Shown: piece by piece, positions 67 through 24,142 of the stretch
How positions within the stretch are numbered: the stretch's first letter is position 1
How the letters are laid out: each line of letters opens with the position of its first letter
Virus record (IMG/VR): IMGVR_UViG_3300028666_000022
Location: 1-64,000 of that record
Direction: 5' to 3' (one strand)
DNA length: 64,000 nucleotides
Translations under genes and position numbers: made by a program
The notes under the pieces: model-generated
Databases searched by the model: none
Told to the model about the DNA's origin: nothing
The model's input: only the letters and a program-made list of their open reading frames with translations

Positions 67-1260
67 TTATTTAAAATCTTCAACAAAGATTTCAATATTA
101 TTATAATTACGAAAACTATATATTTTCTTTTCTTCTGTTTCTTTAATTGATTTTATGAAATCTGGAAGTAAAGAAATTTTACCAATGTTAGAATCAACAA
201 CAAATTGTGGACAAGCTAATCCAGATGTATGTCCTCTTAATGAGTCAATAATCTCTAATCCTTTTGATATGGGTGATTGAAAATGTTTACTGCCCGGTAT
301 TTTATCACAAGAAAAAATATAATATGGTTTCACTCTAAGTTTAAGTAAACTTTTATATAATTTTCTAAATATTTCTTTATTATCATTAATATTCTTAAGT
401 AATACACTTTGTGAACCTAATGATATTCCAGCATCAGCTAACATGTTACAAGCTTTTTGTGTTTCTATAGTTAATTCATCTGGATGAGTAAAATGTATAT
501 TTATAAACAAAGGATGATATTTTTTTAAAATATTAGTTAATTCAGTTGTTATTCTCATTGGTAACACTACTGGTGTCTTAGTTCCAATACGTATAATTTC
601 TACATGTTCAATACTTCTTAATTTTTTTAAGATATATTCAATTTGATCATCCCTTAAAGTTAAAGGATCACCACCAGAAATAATCACATCTCTAATGTTT
701 TTATTATTCTTAATATATTGAAAACCCTTCTCCCATTCTTTTTCTGAAGAAATAATTGAATTTTTCTTAGAAACTGCATAACTTCTACTACAAAATCTAC
801 AATTAATTGAACAAAAATTAGTTACTAAAAATAATGCTCTATCTGGATATTTATGTACGATATTTGAAACAGGAGAATATTTTCTTTCATCTAATGAATC
901 TTCTTTTTCTCCTTCACTTAAATCTAATTCATGAATAGTAGGAATTACTGTTTTACATAAAGGATGATTATTTGGTAATGTACTTAATAAGTAAGTAAAA
1001 TAAGGTGTAATTCTAAAAGGTAAATGATTTTTTGGTAAATCAAAAATAATATTATCTTCTTTATTTTTTAATATTTTGGTTAATTTTTCAACATTAGTAA
1101 TACTGTTTTTTATTTGCCAATTCCAATCATTCCAATCTTCAATTGTAGTATTTAGAAAATTATTATTAATAAAATTATTTAAAGAAATATTATTAACTAA
1201 AAGCGGCACATCAGATTCTTCTGATTCAATAAGGATAGGGGTTGTTGACTGTTCGTTCAT
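67..1260 (-). CDS. KamA-family radical SAM protein (lysine 2,3-aminomutase-like)
   Basis: WNDWNWQ N-terminal motif, HKYPDRAL, CxxxCxxC (CSINCRFC), DVIISGGDPL, IRIGTKTPVVLPMRIT, HFTHPDE, QSVLL, GHTSGLA. Start taken at MNEQ (1260). Confidence 0.9.
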   Translation of the reverse strand: MNEQSTTPILIESEESDVPLLVNNISLNNFINNNFLNTTIEDWNDWNWQIKNSITNVEKLTKILKNKEDNIIFDLPKNHLPFRITPYFTYLLSTLPNNHPLCKTVIPTIHELDLSEGEKEDSLDERKYSPVSNIVHKYPDRALFLVTNFCSINCRFCSRSYAVSKKNSIISSEKEWEKGFQYIKNNKNIRDVIISGGDPLTLRDDQIEYILKKLRSIEHVEIIRIGTKTPVVLPMRITTELTNILKKYHPLFINIHFTHPDELTIETQKACNMLADAGISLGSQSVLLKNINDNKEIFRKLYKSLLKLRVKPYYIFSCDKIPGSKHFQSPISKGLEIIDSLRGHTSGLACPQFVVDSNIGKISLLPDFIKSIKETEEKKIYSFRNYNNIEIFVEDFK

Positions 1261-1473
1261 GTTTTTGTTTTTATCGTTTATAAATAGAAAATTATATGTA
1301 AAAATCAAATAAATACAACGCTTTTTAATGATTATTTTCATTTAATTTTCGAAAACAAAAATATATTTAAATTTTAAATAAACAAAACAAATTAAATATT
1401 TTTTAAATTTATTATTATTTATGAATAATTTAGTTATATTTGTAAAAATAATTTTATATAAAATATATTCACA

Positions 1474-5957: not shown

Positions 5958-6084
5958 TTAATTCTTTCAGAATAAAATACTTAAAAATTCTTTAAAATAT
6001 TTTCATTTATTTTTTAAAACACTTGTATTTATTATTGTTATTTAATATTTTTACTAAAATAATTTTATAAAAATTTATTATTTC

Positions 6085-9000
6085 ATGGAAGAAAAAATCG
6101 TAAAAACTTACACAAAAACAGAAGTTCATAAAGCAACTTTAGAATATTTTAATGGTGATGAACTTGCAACAGATGTATGGATTAAAAAATATTGTTTAAA
6201 AGATTCAGAGGGTAATCTATATGAAAAAACTCCTGATGATATGCATAAAAGACTTGCAAAAGAATTCTATAATGTTGAAAAAACATATAGTAATGATTCT
6301 AGTGAAAATTTATCGGATTATGGTAAAAAAAGAGAAGTTTTAACAGAAGAAAAGATTTTTAATTATTTTAGAAATTTTAAATACATTTCCCCCCAAGGTT
6401 CAATAATGAATATTTTGGGTAATAAAAATGTAATTGGTTCATTATCTAATTGTGTTGTTTTACCAAAAGTTTTTGATAGTTATGGTGGTATTATGTATGC
6501 TGATCAACAATTAGCACAATTATTTAAAAGAAGATGTGGAGCAGGAATTGACATATCTACTTTAAGACCTAAAGACACTAAAGTAACAAATGCTGCTGGT
6601 TCAACAACTGGTGCAATATCTTTTATGGAGAGATATTCCAACACCACTCGTGAAGTAGGACAATCGGGCAGACGTGGTGCTCTAATGATTTCTATAGATG
6701 TTAGGCATCCAGATATTGAAGATTTTATTAAAATAAAAAGAGACTTAAAAAAAGTAACAGGTGCTAATATCTCAATTAAATTGCGAGATGATTTCATGCA
6801 AGCAGTTGAGAAAAATGAAAAATATATACTAAGATTTCCTGTAGATTCAACACCCGAAAATGCTAAATATACTAAAGAAATTAATGCTATTGACATTTGG
6901 AATGAGATAATAAAGTCTGCCCATAGTAGTGCTGAACCGGGTTTGATTTTTTCAGACAGACAACACATGTATTCAACATCATCAATATATCCTAATTGGG
7001 AAAATATTAGTACAAATCCGTGTTTTCCCTCATCAGAATATTTACTAACAAAAAATGGATATTGTTCTTTTGGAGACTTATTTGATTCAAAAAAAGAAAA
7101 TGAAATTATAGCAGATGGAAGAATTTCATATGTTGATGATGGTATTGAAAAACCTAGAAATTGGATCATCGGAAATAATGATAACAATACTTTAATTAGA
7201 AATGCTTCACCCGTATTTAAAACTCAAGAAAATGCTCAATTATTAGAAATAAAAACAGAAATTGGTTTTAATGTTAAATGTACTCCAGAACATCATTTTG
7301 CAACAAAAAGAGGTATGGTTGAAGCAAAAAATTTAGATGTTAACGAAGATGAAATATTAATTTCTCAACCAGAAACATATGATTCTATAATAAACAGAGA
7401 ACCTGAAACATCAGAAGAAATTTCAGCATTTTTAATGGGATTAATTACTGGTGATGGTACATTTAGTGATAGAAGTGGATCATATTCTGTGTGTGTTGAT
7501 ATTTGGGGTGAAGATAAAAATAGATTATTGGATTTATGTAAAAAATATATTAATAAATTATATGTTGAAAATTATGATAAATTAACATATTCAAAAAAAT
7601 GGAGTAATCGAAAATTATCACCATATTATGTCACTCATATAGAGAAATCAGATAAAATAAGAATTATGTCAACATGGTTATATATTTATTTAAATGAAAC
7701 ATATGGATTTAAAAAAGAAACTAAATTTATTGTTCCCAAAAAAATTATGAATAATAGTAGAACAACAATCGGAAAATATTATGTTGCTGGATTTTCATAT
7801 GCTGATGGAACAGTTAATATTTCACAAAAGAAAAAACAAATTTCAGTTAGATTTGGACAAATACATAAAAAATTATTAGATGATATACAATTAATTTTAC
7901 ATTCTAATGGTATTTTAAGTAAAGTATATTTAAGAAAAAAAGAAGGTACTACTGTTATATGGGGAAAAACATATAACACTAAAGCATTTTATGAATTAAT
8001 AACTATCAATAGTTCACATGTTAAATATTCTAAATTAATTGGATTTTTTAATCATCCAAAAAAAGATGATAAGTTAAATGAATATCTCAAAACACATGAA
8101 ACATATACAAAGAATTCATTTTATTCCAAACCAATAGAAATAAATGTAATTAAGAAAAAAGAAGATGTTTATTGTCTTAAAGAAGATATTGGACGAAATA
8201 TTATTGTTAATGGTTGTTCTGTTAGAAGATGTTCTGAAATAGCTATGAATGACGATAGTTGTAGATTAATGGTTGTTAATTATTTTAATTGTGTTGAAAA
8301 TCCATTTACAGAATCAGCAAAATTTAATTATGATAAACTATATGAAATTGTATATGAAGCACAAAGATTAATCGATGATTTGGTTGATTTAGAATTAATT
8401 GCTGTTGAAAAAATAACTGAAAAAATAAAAAGCGATCCTGAACCAGAACACATAAAAAAAATAGAATTAGATACATGGGAAAATTTATATAATAAAGGAA
8501 AAGCAGGCAGACGAACTGGATTAGGATTTACTGCACTTGGAGATACATTAGCAGCATTAGGACATAAATATGATTCTAATGATGCAATGAATGTTATTGA
8601 AAAAATATCTAAAACTAAATTTATTGCTGAATTTGATTCATCAATTGATATGGCAATACAAAGAGGTAAATTTGAAGATTTTAATCCAATATATGAAAAT
8701 AAATCAGACTTTGTAAAAATGATAAAAAATGAACACAATGATTTATATAATAGAATGATGAAATTTGGAAGAAGAAATATTTCAATTAGTACTGTTGCAC
8801 CCACTGGAAGTCTTAGCATTCTTACACAAACTTCCTCCGGCATAGAACCAATTTATCAAATTGGATATAAAAGAAGAAAAAAAATAAACCCACAAGATAA
8901 AGATGCTAAAATTGATTTTGTTGATGATTTGGGTGATTCTTGGACCGAATTTGATGTTTTACATTATAGAGTAAAACAATGGTTAAATATTAATAATATT

Positions 9001-9855
9001 AATAACATTAATGTTGCATATGAAAAAAGTCCATATGTGGGTTCAACAGCTCCAGAAATTGATTGGATTAAAAGAGTTAAGATTCAATCAATAGTTCAAC
9101 GTTATGTGACGCATAGTATAAGTTCTACAATTAATTTATGTGAAGATGTGTCAGTTGAGAAAGTTAGTGAAATATATTTAGAATCATGGAAACAAGGATT
9201 AAAAGGAATTACAGTATATCGTGATGGTAGTCGTAGTGGTGTTCTAGTAAGTAATAAAACAGAAAAGAAAGAAAATAATATTAATTTTCATGAAGACGTA
9301 CACGCACCAAAACGTCCCAAGAGATTAAAAGCTGAAATATATCGTTTTCAAAATAATTTAGAAAAATGGATTGCTGTTGTTGGAATGCTTGATGGTAGGC
9401 CATACGAGATCTTCACCGGGAAACTCATTAATGGGTTAAGTAAACTACCTAATAATATCAAGGATTGTGAAGTGGTAAAAAATATTATTGAAGATGAAAA
9501 TGGTAATAAAACAAAAAGATATGATATTGAATATACAGATGCCGATGGTATTAAACAATCTCATACTGGTTTAAACCATGCTTTTAATCCTGAGTATTGG
9601 AATAATGCCAAACTTATTTCGGGAATCTTGAGACATCGAATGCCGCTAATATCATTATATGAATTAATAAATTCTTTAAATTTCAAAGAAGAAACTATTA
9701 ATACATGGAAAAATGGCGTTGTTCGCGTAATTAAGAAATATATTAAAGATGGTGAAAAAATTAAAGGAAAATGTCCTTCTTGTGGTGGAGAGCATCTTGA
9801 ATTCAAAGAAGGATGTATGACGTGTATGGACTGTGGAGGATCGTTATGTTCTTGA
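6085..9855 (+). CDS. nrdJ: Class II (B12-dependent) ribonucleotide reductase containing an intein
   Basis: SLSNC, GRRGALM, VTGANISI, NP/CSE catalytic motif split by an intein, RRTGLG, TVAPTGS, SISSTINL, KGITVYRDGSR, C-terminal Zn ribbon. Confidence 0.95.
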   Translation: MEEKIVKTYTKTEVHKATLEYFNGDELATDVWIKKYCLKDSEGNLYEKTPDDMHKRLAKEFYNVEKTYSNDSSENLSDYGKKREVLTEEKIFNYFRNFKYISPQGSIMNILGNKNVIGSLSNCVVLPKVFDSYGGIMYADQQLAQLFKRRCGAGIDISTLRPKDTKVTNAAGSTTGAISFMERYSNTTREVGQSGRRGALMISIDVRHPDIEDFIKIKRDLKKVTGANISIKLRDDFMQAVEKNEKYILRFPVDSTPENAKYTKEINAIDIWNEIIKSAHSSAEPGLIFSDRQHMYSTSSIYPNWENISTNPCFPSSEYLLTKNGYCSFGDLFDSKKENEIIADGRISYVDDGIEKPRNWIIGNNDNNTLIRNASPVFKTQENAQLLEIKTEIGFNVKCTPEHHFATKRGMVEAKNLDVNEDEILISQPETYDSIINREPETSEEISAFLMGLITGDGTFSDRSGSYSVCVDIWGEDKNRLLDLCKKYINKLYVENYDKLTYSKKWSNRKLSPYYVTHIEKSDKIRIMSTWLYIYLNETYGFKKETKFIVPKKIMNNSRTTIGKYYVAGFSYADGTVNISQKKKQISVRFGQIHKKLLDDIQLILHSNGILSKVYLRKKEGTTVIWGKTYNTKAFYELITINSSHVKYSKLIGFFNHPKKDDKLNEYLKTHETYTKNSFYSKPIEINVIKKKEDVYCLKEDIGRNIIVNGCSVRRCSEIAMNDDSCRLMVVNYFNCVENPFTESAKFNYDKLYEIVYEAQRLIDDLVDLELIAVEKITEKIKSDPEPEHIKKIELDTWENLYNKGKAGRRTGLGFTALGDTLAALGHKYDSNDAMNVIEKISKTKFIAEFDSSIDMAIQRGKFEDFNPIYENKSDFVKMIKNEHNDLYNRMMKFGRRNISISTVAPTGSLSILTQTSSGIEPIYQIGYKRRKKINPQDKDAKIDFVDDLGDSWTEFDVLHYRVKQWLNINNINNINVAYEKSPYVGSTAPEIDWIKRVKIQSIVQRYVTHSISSTINLCEDVSVEKVSEIYLESWKQGLKGITVYRDGSRSGVLVSNKTEKKENNINFHEDVHAPKRPKRLKAEIYRFQNNLEKWIAVVGMLDGRPYEIFTGKLINGLSKLPNNIKDCEVVKNIIEDENGNKTKRYDIEYTDADGIKQSHTGLNHAFNPEYWNNAKLISGILRHRMPLISLYELINSLNFKEETINTWKNGVVRVIKKYIKDGEKIKGKCPSCGGEHLEFKEGCMTCMDCGGSLCS
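7021..8229 (+). mobile_element. Intein (403 aa) with LAGLIDADG homing endonuclease, inserted at the catalytic NP/C site of NrdJ
   Basis: Starts CFPSSEYLLT; block B CTPEHHF; LAGLIDADG-like FLMGLITGDG and YVAGFSYADG; block F EDVYCL; ends IIVNGCSVRR/C. Removal restores STNPCSEI. Confidence 0.9.
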
Positions 9856-9934
9856 TAATCAGATGATTATAAAAATTATTATGTTAAACGTATTTATATT
9901 GAATACGTTTAACATAATTTTAAAATTAATTAAC

Positions 9935-10549
9935 ATGAAAAATATAAAAGAAATTATTAATGAAGAGATTGAAAATTTAAATGAAATTTTTGATTCGAAG
10001 ATTAAAACTGAATATAAAATAATAACTAGTACCAAATATGATGCTGTTACATATCAATTCAGTACGAAAAGTGGTGTTGTATATGATTTAGAATTTTATA
10101 GAAATGAAATAAGTAATCAAACTAAATTAGAAAGAAAATTTAGGTTATGTGATATTATTAAAGCTAATTGTAATGATAATACTTATGCTGTTGATATTAG
10201 TTTTACTATTGATGATAGATTAAAAAATGATGATGATATTTCTGATGATGAATATAATAAATTAACAAACAATAATGAAACTGTTGAATTAATGGGAAAA
10301 ATTTCATATCTAGTCGATATTTTCATGAGAAGACATTCAGATATTAAAATATATTGTATTGGTGTTGATAGTAATGAAGATAATAGAGGTGAGGATAAAT
10401 TAATTGTTTATTCTAGAATGTTTGAAAATATATTTCGTAATAATTTTAAAAAATTTAAAGGTGATTCCGAAAATTATAAAGATAAAGATGATAATAATAT
10501 TGATACTGGAATTTATTTTATTAATAAAAATATACTAAAACAACAATAA
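9935..10549 (+). CDS. Hypothetical late protein (IINEEIENLNE N-terminus)
   Basis: TATTTATA at ~9891; shares ISYL..F..IY.IG..F....G....YFINK pattern with the next gene. Confidence 0.6.
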   Translation: MKNIKEIINEEIENLNEIFDSKIKTEYKIITSTKYDAVTYQFSTKSGVVYDLEFYRNEISNQTKLERKFRLCDIIKANCNDNTYAVDISFTIDDRLKNDDDISDDEYNKLTNNNETVELMGKISYLVDIFMRRHSDIKIYCIGVDSNEDNRGEDKLIVYSRMFENIFRNNFKKFKGDSENYKDKDDNNIDTGIYFINKNILKQQ

Positions 10550-10551
10550 AT

Positions 10552-11193
10552 ATGTCACGTCCTAGTCGAACTCCGATACCATATTCAGATGGAAAAAAAT
10601 TCTTATATAAGAATGAATTAAATATTATATTATATGCATTAAATATTAAATATAAATATCAAAAAATAGAGACAGAATATGAAAATTTATATAACATATT
10701 TGATAGATATTATAATAAAATATCAATATATCGATTCAACACAAGTTTCAATAAATTATTTGATTTAATGTTTTATAATGTTGATACAGATCACAAAATT
10801 ATGTTAAATAATGAAACAAGCATAACAGATATTGTTGATGAAAAAATATTGAATGAATCAATTGATAATACTTATGACATTTCATTAATAACCACACTAG
10901 AGAACAGATATTTTAAAGAATATCATGGACATAATAAGAAAGAATGTAATGAAATCATACGTAAACTATCATATTTAATTAATGAATTTATTAAAGATAA
11001 CCCAGAAATTAATATTTATGTTATTGGTAAAAACATTGATTTAGAATTACTAGAAAGATATAAAGAAGTGTTTGGTGGCATTTTTTCAGATGGATTTGAA
11101 GTTTTTGAAGGTACATCAAAAGGTTATACTGAAGGCGCAATATATTTCATCAATAAAAAAGTTTTAAAACCTTTGGAAAATAAAATTATTTAA
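10552..11193 (+). CDS. Hypothetical protein, paralog of the upstream gene
   Basis: Shared motifs KLSYLINEF..INIYVIG..GAIYFINKK. Confidence 0.6.
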   Translation: MSRPSRTPIPYSDGKKFLYKNELNIILYALNIKYKYQKIETEYENLYNIFDRYYNKISIYRFNTSFNKLFDLMFYNVDTDHKIMLNNETSITDIVDEKILNESIDNTYDISLITTLENRYFKEYHGHNKKECNEIIRKLSYLINEFIKDNPEINIYVIGKNIDLELLERYKEVFGGIFSDGFEVFEGTSKGYTEGAIYFINKKVLKPLENKII

Positions 11194-12316: not shown

Positions 12317-13678
12317 ATGATTCTAATTCCAAAAATAATTCATCAGGTATGGGAAGGTAAATCTGAACCTTTACCAGAAAATTTAGCTGTATTAGCTAAA
12401 TCATGGAAAAAATATAATCCAGATTGGGAATATAGACTTTGGAATAAAGAACAAATGGAAGATCTGGTTTCAAAAGAATTTCCTGATTTGTTAGAAACAT
12501 ACTATTCTTTTCCTCAAGATGTACAACGTTGGGATGCAATTAGATATATGATATTATATCATATTGGTGGAGTATATGCTGATTTAGATTCCGAGTGTTT
12601 AGATTCTCTTGATGAATTATTAGATGATAAATCTTGTTGTTTTGGTTTAGAACCACCTGAACATGCAGAGGATTTAAACTCAAAATTTGTTATTAGTAAT
12701 GCTATTATGGCAACTAAGCCCAAACAATTATTTCTAAAGAAAGTAATTACTGAATTAAATAATTTTAAATCATTTGAAAATGAATCTTATTATGTTGTTA
12801 AATCAACTGGTCCATTATTATTAAATAGAGTTTATAAAACTTTTACACAAAAAAATAAAATAGATTTAATTGATTATAAATTAGTTACTCCACTTACAAA
12901 ACATGAATCAGATTTAATTTTTCAAGGTAAAGAAACTAACGAAATTGCTGAAAAATTTGATGCTGCTTATGTTGTTCATTATTTTTTTGGTTCTTGGTAT
13001 ACTCCAAAAAATAATATAATTAACAATAAAATCATAGTAAATACATCAATTTCACATAATACTTTTAGTACTAGAATAGTTATTGCGCATTATAATGAAG
13101 ATTTAAGTTGGATTAATAATCTAAATATACCATATTCAATCTATACACACGATAATTCTTTATTAACACATAATAATATTTTTGTTGAAAAAAATAAAGG
13201 AAATGAAGCAACATTATATTTGAAATATATAATCGATAATTATAATAATTTACCAGATAAAATATTATTTGTACATGGACATCAAAATTCATATCATCAA
13301 GAAAATGATACTAATTATATTGCAAATAATTTAAATTGGGGCTTGAATGAATATTTTAATATAGGTAAAAGAAGTGGTTATACTACGATGGATAGTGAAC
13401 ATTGGGAAAAAGAATTTAATTGGTTAATATCTAACTACGAAATTTTTGAAAAATATTTACCGAAGCCCAAAATTTTAAAATTATATCCATGTGCTCAGTT
13501 TGTTGTTTCTAAAAATTTAATCAAACAATATAACATTGAATTTTATGTTACATTATTTGATTGGTTACAAAACACTGAATTAGATAATTATGTTTCGGGA
13601 AGAATTTTTGAGTATATGTGGAATTATTTGTTTACTAAAAATGAAATAGAAAAAGAATTTGATAATATTTTAAAATAA
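12317..13678 (+). CDS. GT32 (OCH1-like, DXD) glycosyltransferase fused to a DUF3431-like domain
   Basis: IPKIIHQVW, RWDAIRY, GGVYADLD, TGP; C-terminal IVIAHYNEDLSW..GNEATLYL..FVHGH..AQFVVS..FEYMW. Confidence 0.85.
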   Translation: MILIPKIIHQVWEGKSEPLPENLAVLAKSWKKYNPDWEYRLWNKEQMEDLVSKEFPDLLETYYSFPQDVQRWDAIRYMILYHIGGVYADLDSECLDSLDELLDDKSCCFGLEPPEHAEDLNSKFVISNAIMATKPKQLFLKKVITELNNFKSFENESYYVVKSTGPLLLNRVYKTFTQKNKIDLIDYKLVTPLTKHESDLIFQGKETNEIAEKFDAAYVVHYFFGSWYTPKNNIINNKIIVNTSISHNTFSTRIVIAHYNEDLSWINNLNIPYSIYTHDNSLLTHNNIFVEKNKGNEATLYLKYIIDNYNNLPDKILFVHGHQNSYHQENDTNYIANNLNWGLNEYFNIGKRSGYTTMDSEHWEKEFNWLISNYEIFEKYLPKPKILKLYPCAQFVVSKNLIKQYNIEFYVTLFDWLQNTELDNYVSGRIFEYMWNYLFTKNEIEKEFDNILK

Positions 13679-14818
13679 ATGAATTTTACTGGTTGTAAAT
13701 ATATTATTGTTGGTTCAGGTATATTCGGCTCAGTTTTAGCGGAACGAATTACTAATATTTTAAACGAAAAGGTTATTGTTATTGAAAAACGTAATCATAT
13801 TGGTGGAAATTGTTATTCTGAAATTGATTCAGAAACCGGAATTGAATATCATACATATGGAACTCACATTTTTCATACCTCAAATCAAGAAGTATGGAAT
13901 TATATAAATAGATTTACTGGTTTTAATTCTTATATTCATCAAGTTCTTACAACATATAAGAATAAAGTTTATCAAATGCCAATAAATTTGGAAACTATAA
14001 ATTCATTTTATAATATTAATTTAAAACCATTTGAAGTACAAACTTTTCTGAACGAAGAAATTAATAAAGAAAATATTAAAAATCCTTCGAATTTTGAAGA
14101 AAAGGCAATTTCTTTAGTGGGAAGATCTCTCTATGAAGCATTTTTGAAAGGTTATACACAAAAACAATGGCAATGTGATCCTAAAGAATTACCAGTATCA
14201 ATATTAAATCGTTTACCGTTTAGAACTGATTATAATGAAAGTTATTTTCACGATAAATGGCAAGGAATTCCTGAAATTGGATATAATGCATTATTTAATA
14301 AATTATTAAATAATCAAAATATTAAGATTTTATTGAATACTGATTTTTCTTCAATTAAACATTTAATTTCTCCTGAAACTAAAATCATTTATGGTGGTTC
14401 AATTGATCAATATTTTGATTATTGTTATGGTAAACTTGAATATAGAAGTTTAAAATTTGAAAAAGAAATTATTGACGTATCTGATTATCAAGGTACATCA
14501 GTTATGAATTATGCCGAAAATTTTATTCCTTATACAAGAATACATGAACCTAAACATTTACATCCTGAAAGAAATTATGTAAAAGATAAAACATTAATAA
14601 TACGAGAATATTCAGTTGTTAACGAAAATGAACCATATTATCCAATTAATAATTTAAAAAATCAACAATTATATGATCAATATGATTTACTTACTAAAGA
14701 TTTAAAGAATGTTATTTTTGGTGGAAGATTGGGAAATTACAAGTACTACGATATGTGCCACGCAATTGAGAATTCATTAAATTTGTTCAAAAAATTAAAA
14801 ATAAACTACAAATTTTAG
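13679..14818 (+). CDS. glf: UDP-galactopyranose mutase
   Basis: IVGSGIFG FAD motif, EKRNHIGGNCY, YGTHIFHT, GYTQKQW, LEYRSL, YTRIHE, EPYYP, GRLGNYKYYDM. Confidence 0.95.
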   Translation: MNFTGCKYIIVGSGIFGSVLAERITNILNEKVIVIEKRNHIGGNCYSEIDSETGIEYHTYGTHIFHTSNQEVWNYINRFTGFNSYIHQVLTTYKNKVYQMPINLETINSFYNINLKPFEVQTFLNEEINKENIKNPSNFEEKAISLVGRSLYEAFLKGYTQKQWQCDPKELPVSILNRLPFRTDYNESYFHDKWQGIPEIGYNALFNKLLNNQNIKILLNTDFSSIKHLISPETKIIYGGSIDQYFDYCYGKLEYRSLKFEKEIIDVSDYQGTSVMNYAENFIPYTRIHEPKHLHPERNYVKDKTLIIREYSVVNENEPYYPINNLKNQQLYDQYDLLTKDLKNVIFGGRLGNYKYYDMCHAIENSLNLFKKLKINYKF

Positions 14819-14849: not shown

Positions 14850-16028
14850 GTGAAAACAATTTATAAAGCTTATAAGTTTAAATTAGAACCTAATAATTCT
14901 CAAAAAGAATTGTTACATAAACATTTCGGATCATGTAGGTTTATTTATAATTATTATCTTAACTTAAGAAAAGAAAACTATTTAAATAATAAAACAAGTT
15001 TAAACTATTATGATAATTCTAAAGATCTAACTCTTTTAAGGAAAAAAGAAGAATATATTTGGCTAAATGAAATTAACGCTCAAAGTTTACAACAATCCTT
15101 AAGACATTTAGATACTGCTTATAATAGATTTTTTAGAAAACAAGGTAAATTTCCTAGATTTAAGAAAAAGAGTGATAGACAGAGTTTTATTATACCACAA
15201 TCTATTATATTAAAAAATAATAAGCTTTTTATTGCTAAGTTTAGAGAAGGAATTAGTTTGAATTTATATAAAGCAATTGAGGGTAAAATATTATTTGCAA
15301 CAATATCGAAATCGCCAGTTGGTAAATATTATGTTTCAATTACTTGTGAGGTACAATATGAACCATATTCTAAAACTAATTCTAAGATAGGTATTGATAC
15401 TGGTATTAAGGATTTAGCTATCTTATCTGATGGTAAGATCTATAAAAATATTAAGGTTTTAAAAACTAATTTAAAAAAAATTAAATATAATCATAGACAA
15501 TTAAGCAAGAAGGTTAAAGGTAGTAAATCAAGGTTAAAACAACAAAATAAATTAGGTAGAATACATGAAAATGTAACAAACATAAGATTAGATTATCTAC
15601 ATAAAGTCAGTACAGAAATCGTCAAAAACCACGATGTTATATGTATTGAAGACTTAGCAGTAAAGAATTTAATGAAAAACCATAAATTATCACAAGCCTT
15701 TTCAGATGTGGCTTTAGGTACGTTTTATAATATGCTTACTTATAAAGCTAATTGGAATGATAAGACTGTTGTAAAAATTGATCGTTGGTTTCCAAGTAGT
15801 AAGACATGTTCAAATTGTGGTTACATAAATCAAGATTTAACTTTAAGTATAAGAGAGTGGGTTTGTCCTGACTGTGGGATAAAACATGATAGGGATTTAA
15901 ATGCTTCAAAAAATATCCTAATACAAGGGTTGAATGTATTGTCTGGTTCAGGGATTGAGTCGGACACTAAACAAAAACAGGTGGAGTCGTTGTCAAAAGG
16001 CGAGGCTATGAAACCTGAAGCAAATTAA
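14850..16028 (+). CDS. tnpB: IS200/IS605-family TnpB RNA-guided endonuclease
   Basis: YKFKLEP, FGSCRFIYN, FPRFKKK, RuvC-I GIDTG, RuvC-II IEDL, FPSSKTCSNCG..CPDCG..HDRDLNAS. No tnpA nearby. Confidence 0.95.
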   Translation: MKTIYKAYKFKLEPNNSQKELLHKHFGSCRFIYNYYLNLRKENYLNNKTSLNYYDNSKDLTLLRKKEEYIWLNEINAQSLQQSLRHLDTAYNRFFRKQGKFPRFKKKSDRQSFIIPQSIILKNNKLFIAKFREGISLNLYKAIEGKILFATISKSPVGKYYVSITCEVQYEPYSKTNSKIGIDTGIKDLAILSDGKIYKNIKVLKTNLKKIKYNHRQLSKKVKGSKSRLKQQNKLGRIHENVTNIRLDYLHKVSTEIVKNHDVICIEDLAVKNLMKNHKLSQAFSDVALGTFYNMLTYKANWNDKTVVKIDRWFPSSKTCSNCGYINQDLTLSIREWVCPDCGIKHDRDLNASKNILIQGLNVLSGSGIESDTKQKQVESLSKGEAMKPEAN

Positions 16029-18730: not shown

Positions 18731-19564
18731 ATGAAAAGAATTGAAATGAAATTAATTAATTATAGTGGTAATACAAAAGCAACTGGTATATATTGTATAA
18801 AAAATCTAGTGAATAATAAAATATATATTGGTAGCACAAAAAGATCATTTGCAACAAGAAAAACGAGACATTTACGTTTATTGAGAAATAATACACATTA
18901 TAATGAGCATTTACAGAATGCTTGGAATTATTATAAAGAAGAAAATTTTAGTTTTGAAGTATTGTATATTTGTTTACCAAATGAATGTGAAAAATATGAA
19001 GGAGAATTCATGAAATTATATAATTCAAATAAAAGAGAATTTGGATATAACATTGCATGTGTATCAACATTTTGTTTTGATTATAAAATTTCCGAAAATC
19101 ATAATATTGAAAAAAGTATTCGAAAAAGAAAAAAATCAATAGAATTGAATGGATTATATACAACCGAAAGGGGTATACAAAAACCGTTCAAATTATATGA
19201 TATTAATGGTAAATTTATTAAAGAATATAATAGTTTTAAAGATTTTTTTAGTGACAATAAAGGTTCAAAAGCACATGTATCAACTATTTTAAGTAATAGA
19301 AAACTTTTATATAAAAATAATAATATAATATTATTTTCTAACGACAATCTTTCTGATGAAGATATTTTAATCGCAAAAAATAAAATAAGGAATATAAAAA
19401 AAATTGATTTATTTGATTTAAATAATAATTATATTAAAACATTTAATTCAGCAATTGAATGTGCTAAATTTATTGGATGTAAAGATGCTGAAATTAGAAT
19501 GTGTTGTACAAATAGAAGAAGTAGAATTAAAAATTATGTAACTAAATATAAAAAAAATGAATAA
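18731..19564 (+). CDS. Free-standing GIY-YIG homing endonuclease with NUMOD1-like C-terminal repeats
   Basis: GIYCIKNLVNNKIYIGST, HYNEHLQNAWN, GYNI; YDINGKFIKEYNS and FDLNNNYIKTFNSA repeats. Confidence 0.9.
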   Translation: MKRIEMKLINYSGNTKATGIYCIKNLVNNKIYIGSTKRSFATRKTRHLRLLRNNTHYNEHLQNAWNYYKEENFSFEVLYICLPNECEKYEGEFMKLYNSNKREFGYNIACVSTFCFDYKISENHNIEKSIRKRKKSIELNGLYTTERGIQKPFKLYDINGKFIKEYNSFKDFFSDNKGSKAHVSTILSNRKLLYKNNNIILFSNDNLSDEDILIAKNKIRNIKKIDLFDLNNNYIKTFNSAIECAKFIGCKDAEIRMCCTNRRSRIKNYVTKYKKNE

Positions 19565-23110: not shown

Positions 23111-24142
23111 ATGAAAGATTCAGCAATTAAGTTCGATTTTAATGATATAACAATAATACCTACAGTTCTAAGTGACATTGATTCAAGAAGCGAAATAAAT
23201 CCATTTTTAGGTGTAAATTTACCAATATTTACTGCACCTATGGATATGGTAATCAATGAAAATAATATACATATATTTGAATCAAACAATATTAATATTT
23301 GTTTACCCAGAAATATTAAGTATGAAAAAATAAAAAATGAAAATTATTTTTATTCATATGGACTTGATGAAATTATTGAAAAATATAATGATGGTGTAAA
23401 ATTACCAAAAAGAGTATTGATTGATACTGCTAATGCACACATGTTAAAAACATTTAATATTTCCAAAGCATTAAAAGAAAAATTTGGTAATGAAATTGTA
23501 TTAATGGTTGGTAATATTGCAAATCCCGAAACATATAGAAAATATTGTGAAATTGGTGTTAATTGGCTAAGAGTTGGAATTGGCGGGGGTTCAGTGTGTA
23601 CAACTTCGGCTAATGTTTCTATACATTTTGCAATGGCTTCATTAATTAATGAATGTTATTTAATTTCCAAAGAATTTGAAAATCCAACAAAAATAATTGG
23701 AGATGGTGGATTTAAAAATTTTGCTGATATAATTAAAGGTCTTGCATTAGGATCATCAGCAATTATGCTTGGTGGAATTTTTAATAAAACATTGGAGAGT
23801 TGTAGTGATACGTTTATTTTAGATGATGAAAACGATTATATTAGAGTCGATTATGAAGAATCATTAAAACTTTTTAATGAAGGTTGTAATCTATATAAAT
23901 ATTATAGGGGGATGTCAACCAAAGAAGTTCAAAAAATTTGGAATAGAAAAGAATTAAAAACTAGTGAAGGTATAACTAAATTTAATAAAGTAGAATATAT
24001 TCTTCCTAAATGGTGTGAAAATTTTACTGATTATTTAAGAAGTGCTATGTCATATACTGGTGCAAGAACATTAAATGACTTTATTGGCAAAGTTGAATTT
24101 TGTCAAATCACAAAAAATGCATATGAGCGATTTAATAAATAA
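23111..24142 (+). CDS. GMP reductase / IMP dehydrogenase family
   Basis: FDFNDITIIP, APMD, IDTANAH, GNIA, VGIGGGSVCTT, IIGDGG, MLGG, YRGMST, LRSAMSYTGAR. Confidence 0.9.
   Translation: MKDSAIKFDFNDITIIPTVLSDIDSRSEINPFLGVNLPIFTAPMDMVINENNIHIFESNNINICLPRNIKYEKIKNENYFYSYGLDEIIEKYNDGVKLPKRVLIDTANAHMLKTFNISKALKEKFGNEIVLMVGNIANPETYRKYCEIGVNWLRVGIGGGSVCTTSANVSIHFAMASLINECYLISKEFENPTKIIGDGGFKNFADIIKGLALGSSAIMLGGIFNKTLESCSDTFILDDENDYIRVDYEESLKLFNEGCNLYKYYRGMSTKEVQKIWNRKELKTSEGITKFNKVEYILPKWCENFTDYLRSAMSYTGARTLNDFIGKVEFCQITKNAYERFNK

What the first reader, a model, noticed from the sequence alone, without database searches (positions are those of the whole stretch)
7021..8232. RNR intein ends in Arg-Arg instead of His-Asn/Gln
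Seen: the C-terminal splice junction reads IIVNGCSVRR/CSEI (GTT AGA AGA TGT), and block F has Cys (VYCL) while Cys1 is retained. Established: canonical splicing needs cyclisation of a terminal Asn (or Gln/Asp), and the +1 Cys here is the essential thiyl-radical Cys of NPCxE, so excision should be required. The rest of nrdJ and the LAGLIDADG motifs look intact. Inference: non-canonical splicing chemistry, a helper-dependent step, or a recently dead intein.
Basis: partly seen in the sequence, partly recalled or inferred. Interest (0 to 1): 0.72.

Follow-up and report, generated by a model that had tools for sequence, protein, structure and literature searches.

The report
RNR inteins that end in arginine
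The self-splicing protein insert (intein) in this jumbo phage's only ribonucleotide reductase ends in Arg-Arg instead of the asparagine or glutamine that textbook splicing chemistry needs. This is not an error or a dead element: it belongs to a large, conserved, mobile group of phage inteins that all end in arginine, so a still undescribed way of finishing protein splicing probably exists.

Summary
ORF 6085-9855 is an AdoCbl-dependent RNR (NrdJ). A 403-aa LAGLIDADG intein (7021-8229) sits directly before the radical Cys. It keeps Cys1 and block B Thr/His, has Cys at block F position 4, and ends Arg714-Arg715 before Cys716. Contigs from two other samples are identical across the junction.

It is not a recent death. 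All 79 Arg-terminal inteins among 191 relatives at this site fall in one well-supported clade. At least 31 of these are representatives of 50%-identity clusters. The terminal Arg is invariant and never Lys, and it is encoded by varied synonymous codons. Arg or Lys also replaces the block F His in every member, and Arg usually replaces the penultimate His. Five nested members that end in Gln or Asn have all returned to His or Asn in block F.

These inteins are scattered over the host-gene tree (at least 14 gains or losses), and this phage's closest RNR relatives have the empty site. Members with a dead or lost endonuclease keep all splicing residues, and dN/dS is below 0.5.

Best reading: a functional, mobile intein lineage with a remodelled C-terminal cleavage step. 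The chemistry is unproven. Candidates are Arg side-chain cyclisation, attack by the block F Cys, or a helper protease. I found no published description.

The parts
6085..9855 (+). nrdJ ORF. It encodes an adenosylcobalamin-dependent ribonucleotide reductase precursor of 1256 aa plus stop, and is the only RNR gene in the 339,898-bp phage genome.
   Evidence: TIGR02504, 446 bits, above cut-off. Searches find one PF02867 hit and no NrdD or small subunit in the genome.
6085..7020 (+). N-extein, residues 1-312, ending ...ENISTNP.
   Evidence: Intein-free relatives read NISTNP|CSEIAMN.
7021..8229 (+). Intein, residues 313-715 (403 aa). It is a HINT splicing domain with an inserted LAGLIDADG homing endonuclease.
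   Evidence: PF14890, PF14528. The AF2 model has pLDDT 93.7. Top Foldseek PDB hits are the TliVMA, PI-PfuI and PI-SceI inteins.
7021..7059 (+). Block A, CFPSSEYLLTKNG. Cys1 (7021-7023) is invariant in the family.
7279..7317 (+). Block B, CTPEHHFATKRGM. Thr400 and His403 are conserved. The clade-specific Ala406 and Met411 follow.
7429..7464 (+). First LAGLIDADG motif, FLMGLITGDGTF. The catalytic Asp is retained.
   Evidence: This Asp is conserved in 92% of the Arg clade.
7777..7815 (+). Second LAGLIDADG motif, YYVAGFSYADGTV. The catalytic Asp is retained.
   Evidence: This Asp is conserved in 94% of the Arg clade.
8161..8214 (+). Block F, EDVYCLKEDIGRNIIVNG. Cys697 (8173-8175) takes the place of the usual F:4 Asp. 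Arg704 (8194-8196) takes the place of the block F His.
   Evidence: One search aligns this block with EEVFDLTVPGPHNFVAND of the Ssp DnaB intein (1mi8).
8215..8229 (+). Block G, CSVRR. Arg714 (8224-8226) stands where the penultimate His is usual. Arg715 (8227-8229) stands where the terminal Asn, Gln or Asp is usual.
   Evidence: Codon variation in relatives is shown.
8230..8232 (+). +1 Cys716. It is the first residue of the C-extein and the Cys of the NPCxE motif, the thiyl-radical Cys according to established RNR knowledge.
8230..9852 (+). C-extein, residues 716-1256. It includes CSEIAMNDDSCRL and a C-terminal Cys-rich tail.
   Evidence: The closest relative, L024, is 75% identical and has no intein.

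Best explanation
The insert is a functional, mobile intein. It belongs to an old and diverse lineage of phage-borne RNR inteins in which the catalytic set for the third splicing step (cleavage at the C-terminal junction) has been exchanged as a unit. Block F His, penultimate His and terminal Asn/Gln have become Arg/Lys, Arg and Arg, on a background where block F position 4 is Cys instead of Asp.

Shown: the residues, their conservation, their coupled switching, the mobility of the element, and purifying selection on both the intein and the host gene.

Inferred: the first two steps run as in class 1 inteins, namely the Cys1 N-to-S acyl shift helped by block B Thr/His, then transfer of the N-extein to Cys716. 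The Arg715-Cys716 bond is then broken autocatalytically without Asn or Gln.

My preferred chemistry, which is pure inference, is cyclisation of the terminal Arg. Its N-epsilon lies exactly as many atoms from the backbone carbonyl as the amide N of Gln, so attack would give a six-membered delta-lactam, analogous to the glutarimide formed by Gln-terminal inteins. The two neighbouring cationic residues would lower the guanidinium pKa and stabilise the oxyanion. The lineage arose among Gln/Asn-terminal inteins, and Gln to Arg is a single nucleotide change (CAR to CGR).

The confidence given is for 'functional, autocatalytic, non-canonical third step', not for the specific chemistry. I put the Arg-cyclisation chemistry at about 0.3.
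For: 1. Family trait. About 55 homologs at 29-55% identity end in Arg|Cys and have Cys at F:4. Of the 191 related inteins analysed, 79 end in Arg. Of 139 full-length representatives of 50%-identity clusters, 31 end in Arg.

2. Selection acts on the amino acid. In 14 viral loci the penultimate Arg is encoded by CGT, CGA, CGC or AGA and the terminal Arg by AGA or AGG.

3. One clade with a coherent signature. All 79 lie in an 84-row clade (SH-aLRT 99), nested in a 110-row F:4-Cys clade whose other members end in Gln or Asn. Clade-specific residues include Arg at the block F His position, G:6 and G:7. The block F position was fixed by alignment to the Ssp DnaB intein.

4. Coupling.
- Terminal Arg always occurs with Arg (77) or Lys (2) at the block F His position.
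- The five nested members ending in Gln or Asn have His or Asn there.
- No mixed state is seen among F:4-Cys inteins.
- Four of four independent contrasts go the same way.
- An AU test rejects strict monophyly of the Arg-terminal rows at p = 0.016.

5. Specificity. Lys is tolerated at the block F and penultimate positions but never at the terminus.

6. Mobility without damage to the host gene.
- On the C-extein tree the Arg inteins need at least 14 gains or losses, at least 11 on well-supported branches.
- The window's sister L024 and the next relative L093 have the empty site.
- Of the 76 related viral RNRs in which the junction could be read, 59 are empty and 5 carry Arg inteins.

7. Splicing residues outlast the endonuclease. 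P0051 has lost both LAGLIDADG Asp residues. P0052 (300 aa) and P0060 (243 aa) have degraded endonucleases. All three keep Cys1, block B, F:4 Cys and RR.

8. Purifying selection. dN/dS is 0.06-0.4 for most extein comparisons and 0.21-0.48 for Arg inteins.

9. The gene matters to the phage. It is the only RNR in a complete 340-kb genome. Three other inteins in the same genome end canonically in Asn.

10. The model folds confidently as a complete intein.

11. Background. The review PMC4031507 names the block F His, the penultimate His and the terminal Asn as the residues of step 3, and lists only Asn, Gln, Asp and Glu as terminal residues.
Against: - No splicing product has been observed. Everything here is comparative.
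- A guanidinium group is a very poor nucleophile at physiological pH, and no protein is known to cleave its own backbone through Arg.
- The covariation test has only 4-5 independent contrasts (p = 0.125). The two coupled positions are 11 codons apart, so linkage could contribute.
- The AU test group was defined after the tree had been seen.
- dS is near saturation.
- The RNR is probably dispensable for a phage in the laboratory, so being the only RNR is weaker evidence than it would be in a cell.
- All members come from metagenomic viral contigs. No cultured phage or organism with an Arg-terminal intein was found.
- The coordinates of the AF2 model were not available, so I could not measure distances between Cys697, Arg704, Arg714 and the scissile bond.
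Confidence: 0.68

Rival explanations
1. The intein is functional and autocatalytic, but the block F Cys (Cys697) does the cleavage. Its thiolate, stabilised by the arginines, attacks the Arg715 carbonyl as a cysteine protease would. This releases the amine of Cys716 for the final S-to-N shift. The intein is left as a thiolactone that later hydrolyses. A variant has the Arg-Cys716 bond first undergo its own N-to-S shift.
For: Terminal Arg occurs only on the F:4-Cys background: 87 of 87 including partial rows and 79 of 79 in the tree set. In class 3 inteins the F:4 Cys is a proven nucleophile located in the active site (PMC4031507). Arginines commonly lower thiol pKa and form oxyanion holes, which is established enzymology.
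Against: F:4 Cys is equally present in about 50 sister inteins that end in Gln or Asn, so it does not by itself go with Arg. F:4 never changes across the 4-5 switches of the terminal residue. This model does not explain why the terminus must be Arg and never Lys or any other residue.
Confidence: 0.15
2. Helper-dependent splicing. A host or phage protease that cuts after Arg frees the N-terminal Cys of the C-extein. That Cys then ligates with the N-extein thioester on Cys1, as in native chemical ligation.
For: The terminal residue is invariably Arg and usually preceded by a basic residue, which resembles a protease site. The chemistry after cleavage is well established in expressed protein ligation.
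Against: The intein moves alone between RNR genes of many different phages, so a phage-encoded helper would not travel with it. The terminal Arg is coupled to an internal active-site residue, the block F His position, which an external protease would not require. The penultimate residue can be Thr, Val, Ala, Ser or Gln. Neighbouring genes here are an RNA ligase and unknown proteins, with no recognisable peptidase.
Confidence: 0.08
3. The Arg-terminal inteins do not splice. They are selfish homing elements that inactivate a dispensable phage gene, or the RNR works with the insert still in place.
For: A phage RNR is an auxiliary gene. A homing endonuclease can spread despite a fitness cost. No product has been observed.
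Against: Cys1, block B Thr/His, F:4 Cys and the terminal Arg are 99-100% conserved over deep divergence. They are kept even where the endonuclease is dead or deleted, which selfish homing cannot explain. Exteins stay full length with dN/dS of 0.06-0.4 in most comparisons. The insert sits directly before the Cys of the NPCxE motif. From RNR structures, which I did not test here, that Cys lies at the tip of the finger loop inside the barrel, where a 45-kDa domain cannot be accommodated.
Confidence: 0.07
4. Artefact or recoding: a sequencing or assembly error, reassigned AGA codons, or removal of the insert at the RNA level.
For: None found.
Against: Contigs from two other runs are identical across the junction, and no joint skips the intein. 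Relatives encode the same two arginines with CGN and AGR codons. AGA encodes conserved RNR arginines in the same gene. No Rfam family, including introns, matches 6000-10000 at E <= 1. The insert boundaries coincide exactly with a HINT domain.
Confidence: 0.02

Closest known systems
Gln-terminal RNR inteins, for example the Chilo iridescent virus RNR intein
   Same: These are inteins in RNR large subunits with a non-Asn terminal residue and a non-His penultimate residue. Sister clades of the Arg lineage at the same NP|C site end in GQ, AQ or SQ. The CIV intein splices better with its native Gln than with Asn (PMC4031507). The side-chain nitrogen of Gln and the N-epsilon of Arg are equally far from the backbone carbonyl.
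   Different: Gln carries an amide that can cyclise to a glutarimide, and its splicing has been demonstrated. Arg carries a guanidinium, for which no such reaction is known. The Arg lineage also swaps the block F His for Arg or Lys.
Class 3 inteins (mycobacteriophage Bethlehem DnaB, Deinococcus Snf2)
   Same: Cys at block F position 4, and a phage-associated lineage that appears to have arisen once (PMC2807308 and PMC4031507).
   Different: Class 3 inteins lack a functional N-terminal nucleophile, carry the Trp(B:12)-Cys(F:4)-Thr(G:5) triplet (recalled from the class 3 literature, not read here), and still end in Asn. Here Cys1 is invariant, B:12 is Ile or Phe, and the terminus is Arg.
SPbeta bnrdE intein (Bacillus phage SPBc2)
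   Same: This is the nearest relative in the GenBank phage collection, at 26% identity over the whole intein. It occupies the same site before the radical Cys of an RNR and has the same LAGLIDADG architecture.
   Different: It is fully canonical around the C-terminal junction: Asp at F:4, His in block F, and it ends in Gly-Asn|Cys.
Bacteroides phage SJC03 NrdJ intein
   Same: It occupies the same site in a homologous NrdJ and has F:4 Cys and Cys1. The sister phage DAC22 has the empty site with nearly identical exteins, so it is recently mobile.
   Different: It ends in Ser-Gln|Cys and is only 321 aa long. It comes from a cultured phage, whereas all Arg-type members are metagenomic.
NrdJ-1 split intein (PDB 8ubs) and PI-PfuI (1dq3)
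   Same: Solved intein structures that match the family by sequence profile or by fold. NrdJ-1 is a NrdJ intein by its depositors' name; PI-PfuI is the Pyrococcus furiosus RNR intein only from my own knowledge, as the entry title says just 'archaeal intein-encoded homing endonuclease'.
   Different: As far as I recall, both have canonical block F and G residues. I did not read their sequences here.

Membership tests
Intein (HINT splicing domain with homing endonuclease) | In-frame insert in a conserved site of a host protein, with the host sequence continuous across it | tested here: met
   The NrdJ_Z profile resumes at position 282 exactly at Cys716. Intein-free relatives read STNP|CSEI.
Intein (HINT splicing domain with homing endonuclease) | HINT fold with blocks A, B, F and G | tested here: met
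   PF14890 and TIGR01445 match. The AF2 model has pLDDT 93.7, and intein structures are the top Foldseek hits.
Intein (HINT splicing domain with homing endonuclease) | Demonstrated excision of the insert and ligation of the exteins | not testable with these tools
   Requires expression plus SDS-PAGE and mass spectrometry.
Class 1 (canonical) intein | Cys or Ser at position 1 and Cys, Ser or Thr at +1 | tested here: met
   Cys313 and Cys716, both invariant in the family.
Class 1 (canonical) intein | Block B Thr and His | tested here: met
   Thr400 and His403, 99-100% conserved.
Class 1 (canonical) intein | C-terminal residue able to cyclise (Asn, or Gln, Asp or Glu) | tested here: not met
   Arg715. 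Arg is present in 79 of 79 Arg-terminal clade members. The accepted residues are listed in PMC4031507.
Class 1 (canonical) intein | Assisting residues: F:4 Asp, block F His, penultimate His (common, not obligatory) | tested here: not met
   Cys697, Arg704 and Arg714.
Class 3 intein | No N-terminal Cys or Ser nucleophile | tested here: not met
   Cys1 is invariant.
Class 3 intein | Trp at B:12, Cys at F:4 and Thr at G:5 | tested here: not met
   The triplet definition is from my recollection of the class 3 literature, not from a paper read here. Cys at F:4 is present. B:12 is Phe405 here and Ile in the consensus. G:5 is Val here and Thr, Ala or Val in relatives.
Class 3 intein | C-terminal Asn | tested here: not met
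   Arg715.
Bacterial intein-like (BIL) domain | Lacks the +1 nucleophile and is not inserted in conserved sites of essential enzymes | tested here: not met
   +1 is Cys, and the site is the catalytic NPCxE motif.
LAGLIDADG homing endonuclease | Two LAGLIDADG motifs with their acidic residues | tested here: met
   GDG at 7429-7464 and ADG at 7777-7815. PF14528 matches at 7e-14. I-DmoI-like fold matches were found.
LAGLIDADG homing endonuclease | Cleavage of the intein-free allele | not testable with these tools
   Indirect support only: sporadic distribution on the extein tree.
Class II (AdoCbl-dependent) ribonucleotide reductase NrdJ | Score above the equivalog cut-off, with no small subunit gene | tested here: met
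   TIGR02504 scores 446 bits against a cut-off of 399.95. PF00268 and PF13597 are absent from the genome.

The most novel reading that the evidence does not exclude
Arg-terminal inteins are a fourth mechanistic class of protein splicing. In it, the third step is cyclisation of the C-terminal arginine to a delta-lactam. The reaction is made possible by a cluster of basic residues that replaces the two catalytic histidines. This would be the first case of an arginine side chain acting as the nucleophile that breaks a protein backbone.
Probability: 0.3. Interest if true: 0.95.

Novelty: new variant of a known kind. Interest (0 to 1): 0.85.

Why it matters
All three recognised intein classes converge on one final chemistry, cyclisation of a terminal Asn (or Gln, Asp or Glu). 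A natural, diverse lineage that has kept a terminal Arg through deep divergence means one of two things. Either a new backbone-cleavage chemistry exists, or splicing can depend on something outside the intein.

Either answer would revise the textbook mechanism. It could also supply protein-engineering tools with a different pH or redox dependence and a different C-terminal end product.

The finding also shows that current intein annotation is blind to this group. The C-terminal intein model gave no hit here. All members found come from uncultured phages.

The coupled switching between the His/Asn-type and Arg/Arg-type configurations is a ready-made natural mutagenesis series for dissecting step 3.

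Tried and rejected
- Sequencing or assembly error: rejected. Other samples give identical contigs and the family conserves the residues.
- Codon reassignment or a tandem rare-codon effect at AGA AGA: rejected. Relatives use CGN for the first Arg, and AGA encodes conserved RNR arginines.
- RNA-level removal: no Rfam match, and no joint skips the intein in the DNA contigs. No RNA data were available.
- Alternative splice boundary at Asn709 (IIVN|G): rejected. The next residue is Gly, the Cys711 of this phage is Ile in most relatives, and the host profile resumes only at Cys716.
- Class 3 membership: rejected (see membership test).
- Strict covariation of F:4 Cys with terminal Arg: only one-directional. 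F:4 Cys also occurs with Gln or Asn.
- Cellular or cultured carriers: the genome-contig scan gave two low-GC MAG contigs only. The GenBank phage collection holds no Arg-type intein.
- Names and accessions of NCBI-sourced members: none returned.
- Literature: five full-text searches and three papers read turned up no Arg-terminal intein. Subscription journals are not covered, so an earlier mention cannot be excluded.
- Geometry: the AF2 coordinates were not exposed to the Python box, so no distances could be measured.
Full report
**What is there.** The window is the first 64 kb of a complete 339,898-bp virus record with direct terminal repeats and 25% GC. It is a T4-like jumbo phage. It has a T4-type portal gene, itself split by an intein, and no match to the NCLDV capsid model, a search that also rang in no control genome and so proves little. 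It was assembled from, and recurs in, rhizosphere metagenomes.

ORF 6085-9855 (+) encodes a 1256-aa protein.
- It scores above the curated cut-off for adenosylcobalamin-dependent ribonucleotide reductase (TIGR02504, 446 bits).
- It covers the whole Pfam RNR barrel model.
- It is the only RNR in the genome. No second large subunit, no class III enzyme and no small subunit were found.

Residues 313-715 (window 7021-8229) are an intein with an inserted LAGLIDADG endonuclease. This rests on the Pfam and NCBIfam hits, an AlphaFold model with mean pLDDT 93.7, and archaeal and yeast intein-endonucleases as the best structural matches.

**The observation.** The junctions read STNP|CFPSSEYLL and IIVNGCSVRR|CSEI, the latter encoded GTT AGA AGA TGT.
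- Cys1 and the block B Thr and His are present.
- Block F reads VYCLKEDIGRN.

Alignment to the Ssp DnaB mini-intein places Cys697 on the usual Asp (F:4) and Arg704 on the block F His. The three residues that the review literature assigns to the third splicing step are the block F His, the penultimate His and the terminal Asn (PMC4031507). All three are Arg here.

The ending is not an artefact.
- Contigs from two other samples are identical over the junction.
- AGA is the normal Arg codon in this gene.
- No RNA family matches the region.
- The three other inteins of the same genome end in Asn.

**It is a family, not an accident.** A search with the intein found 61 RNRs carrying a related intein at the same site. 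About 55 of them, at 29-55% identity, end in Arg|Cys and have Cys at F:4. Only the most distant ones have Asp at F:4 and end in Gly/Ala-Gln.

A profile search of 1.8 billion cluster representatives found 1,145 proteins at E < 1e-30. I could analyse 191 full-length inteins, all inserted at NP|C(x)E.
- 79 of the 191 end in Arg.
- Of 139 representatives of 50%-identity clusters, 31 end in Arg.
- In 14 viral contigs the two arginines are encoded by CGT, CGA, CGC, AGA and AGG, so the amino acid is what is selected.

**Phylogeny.** I built a tree without the trait columns. All Arg-terminal inteins lie in one 84-member clade (SH-aLRT 99). That clade is nested in a 110-member clade with Cys at F:4 whose other branches end in Gln or Asn. 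Inteins with Asp at F:4 and HN, GN or GQ endings lie outside.

The Arg clade has its own signature:
- Leu9, Phe17, Trp48, Ala94 and Met99;
- Arg (97%) or Lys at the block F His position;
- Arg (90%) at the penultimate position;
- Arg (100%) at the terminus.

Five members nested inside the clade end in Arg-Gln, Arg-Asn, Lys-Asn or Thr-Asn, and all five carry His or Asn at the block F position. Conversely, all 79 Arg-terminal members carry Arg or Lys there. No mixed state occurs among F:4-Cys inteins.
- Four of four independent contrasts agree. That is too few for significance (sign test p = 0.125).
- An AU test rejects strict monophyly of the Arg-terminal rows at p = 0.016, with the caveat that the group was defined after seeing the tree.
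- The exceptions differ from their sisters by point changes in an otherwise similar block F-G. That argues against wholesale recombination of the C-terminal segment, but the two sites are only 11 codons apart.
- Lys is accepted at the block F and penultimate positions but never at the terminus.

**Is it functional?** Four lines of evidence say yes.

1. Mobility. I could read the junction in 76 viral relatives of this C-extein. Of these, 59 have the empty site, 5 carry Arg-type inteins, and 12 carry other inteins (HN, AN, SN, KN, GQ). On the extein tree the Arg-type inteins need at least 14 gains or losses. This phage's sister (L024, 75% identical) and the next relative (L093) are empty. An element that destroyed the gene at each invasion would not leave intact genes everywhere.
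2. The catalytic Asp residues of both LAGLIDADG motifs are conserved in 92-94% of the clade. Where they are lost (P0051), or the endonuclease is degraded (P0052, 300 aa; P0060, 243 aa), Cys1, block B, F:4 Cys and Arg-Arg all remain. This is the classic signature of selection for splicing rather than for homing.
3. dN/dS is 0.06-0.4 for most extein comparisons and 0.21-0.48 for Arg-type inteins, with dS near saturation, so these are upper estimates. Two N-extein comparisons involving L009 gave 0.65 and 0.71, and WIN vs L006 C-extein gave 0.54. L009's RNR ORF is much longer than the others and probably carries a further intein in the compared stretch, which I did not check.
4. The insert lies directly before the Cys of NPCxE. 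From established RNR structures, that Cys sits at the tip of the finger loop inside the barrel. I infer that the enzyme cannot work unexcised.

**How it most likely works.** Steps 1 and 2 are probably canonical, because Cys1, block B Thr/His and the +1 Cys are intact. Step 3 cannot be Asn or Gln cyclisation.

The coupled exchange of the block F residue and the terminal residue points to chemistry inside the active site, not to an external protease.

I favour cyclisation of the terminal Arg, for these reasons:
- Its N-epsilon is positionally equivalent to the amide N of Gln, so attack gives a six-membered ring.
- The lineage arose among Gln/Asn-terminal inteins.
- Gln to Arg is one transition.
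- A cluster of cationic neighbours is the known way enzymes depress an Arg pKa.
- Lys is never accepted at the terminus.

Delta-lactam formation from activated Arg is familiar in peptide synthesis. That is my own knowledge and was not tested here.

The main alternative is attack by the F:4 Cys thiolate. F:4 Cys is a precondition for terminal Arg (79 of 79). However, it is equally present in Gln/Asn-terminal sisters, including the Bacteroides phage SJC03 intein (Ser-Gln|Cys), and it never changes when the terminus switches.

A protease-assisted, ligation-type route and a non-splicing selfish element remain possible but fit the data less well.

**Comparison with what is known.** This is an intein by architecture, fold and site. 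It fails the class 1 definition at the terminal residue. It fails the class 3 definition at three of four features: Cys1 is present, there is no Trp at B:12, and there is no terminal Asn.

Its nearest described functional analogues are the Gln-terminal RNR inteins, such as the Chilo iridescent virus intein. The nearest relative in the GenBank phage collection is the canonical SPbeta bnrdE intein, at 26% identity.

Five full-text searches and three papers gave no report of an Arg-terminal intein. The library lacks most subscription journals. No cultured phage or organism carrying one was found, which may explain why the group has gone unnoticed.

**Verdict.** The 'recently dead intein' and 'sequencing error' readings are refuted. 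A conserved, mobile lineage with a non-canonical third step is well supported by comparative evidence, but no biochemistry exists. The specific chemistry is open.

Noticed in passing
G000:C1:288443-291016 (+), outside the window: A UvrD/helicase-like ORF carries a LAGLIDADG intein with a fully canonical ending: VDE|CLPKETYILT at the N-junction, YDMSVEDNHNF in block F, and GIVAHN|CQDTG at the C-junction.
   Followed up: partly
G000:C1:311219-314716 (-), outside the window: The T4-type portal gene (PF07230, matched in two pieces) is split by a large intein, LPGA|CLALDTKIDLL ... CGIFTKN|S. Its middle part is Cys-rich and looks like zinc fingers and HNH rather than LAGLIDADG.
   Followed up: partly
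G000:C1:302640-304577 (-), outside the window: A third intein-bearing ORF, HPD|CVNASESKICTKDG ... KAHWTGN|S. Its block F seems to read IACVRV, which would be another Cys1 plus F:4-Cys intein, but it ends in Asn. The Pfam hit was below cut-off (20 bits).
   Followed up: no
L022 (Bacteroides phage SJC03, MT074146) against L023 (DAC22, MT074141): Two cultured B. thetaiotaomicron phages have almost identical NrdJ genes. SJC03 has a 321-aa intein (F:4 Cys, ending Ser-Gln|Cys) and DAC22 has the empty site. Both genes are annotated only as 'hypothetical protein'. This is a tractable system for studying F:4-Cys/Gln inteins.
   Followed up: partly
window 14850-16028 (+): A TnpB/IS605 OrfB-type gene (OrfB_IS605, Cas12f1-like TNB and HTH domains) lies inside the phage genome.
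   Followed up: no
window 18731-19564 (+): A free-standing GIY-YIG/NUMOD1 homing endonuclease gene. Together with four inteins, this makes the genome rich in selfish elements.
   Followed up: no
window 9833-10549 and 10552-11193 (+): Two adjacent ORFs with no Pfam match lie directly downstream of nrdJ. They share similar C-terminal motifs (IYCIGVD / IYVIGKN, and GIYFINKNILK / AIYFINKKVLK), so they look like tandem paralogs of unknown function.
   Followed up: no
window 67-1341 (-), 12317-14818 (+), 23111-24142 (+): Auxiliary metabolic genes that are unusual for a phage: a radical-SAM lysine-2,3-aminomutase-like protein, a glycosyltransferase with DUF3431, a UDP-galactopyranose mutase, and an IMPDH/GMP-reductase family protein.
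   Followed up: no
L007/L038, L009, L011; P0003, P0005, P0007, P0023 and others: Many RNRs that carry an Arg-type intein are 1,500-1,760 aa long. They appear to hold one or more further inteins elsewhere in the same gene.
   Followed up: no
window 6085-9852, NCBIfam scan: The N-terminal intein model (TIGR01445) matches, but no C-terminal intein model matches at E <= 0.001. Annotation rules that require both ends would miss this lineage.
   Followed up: partly
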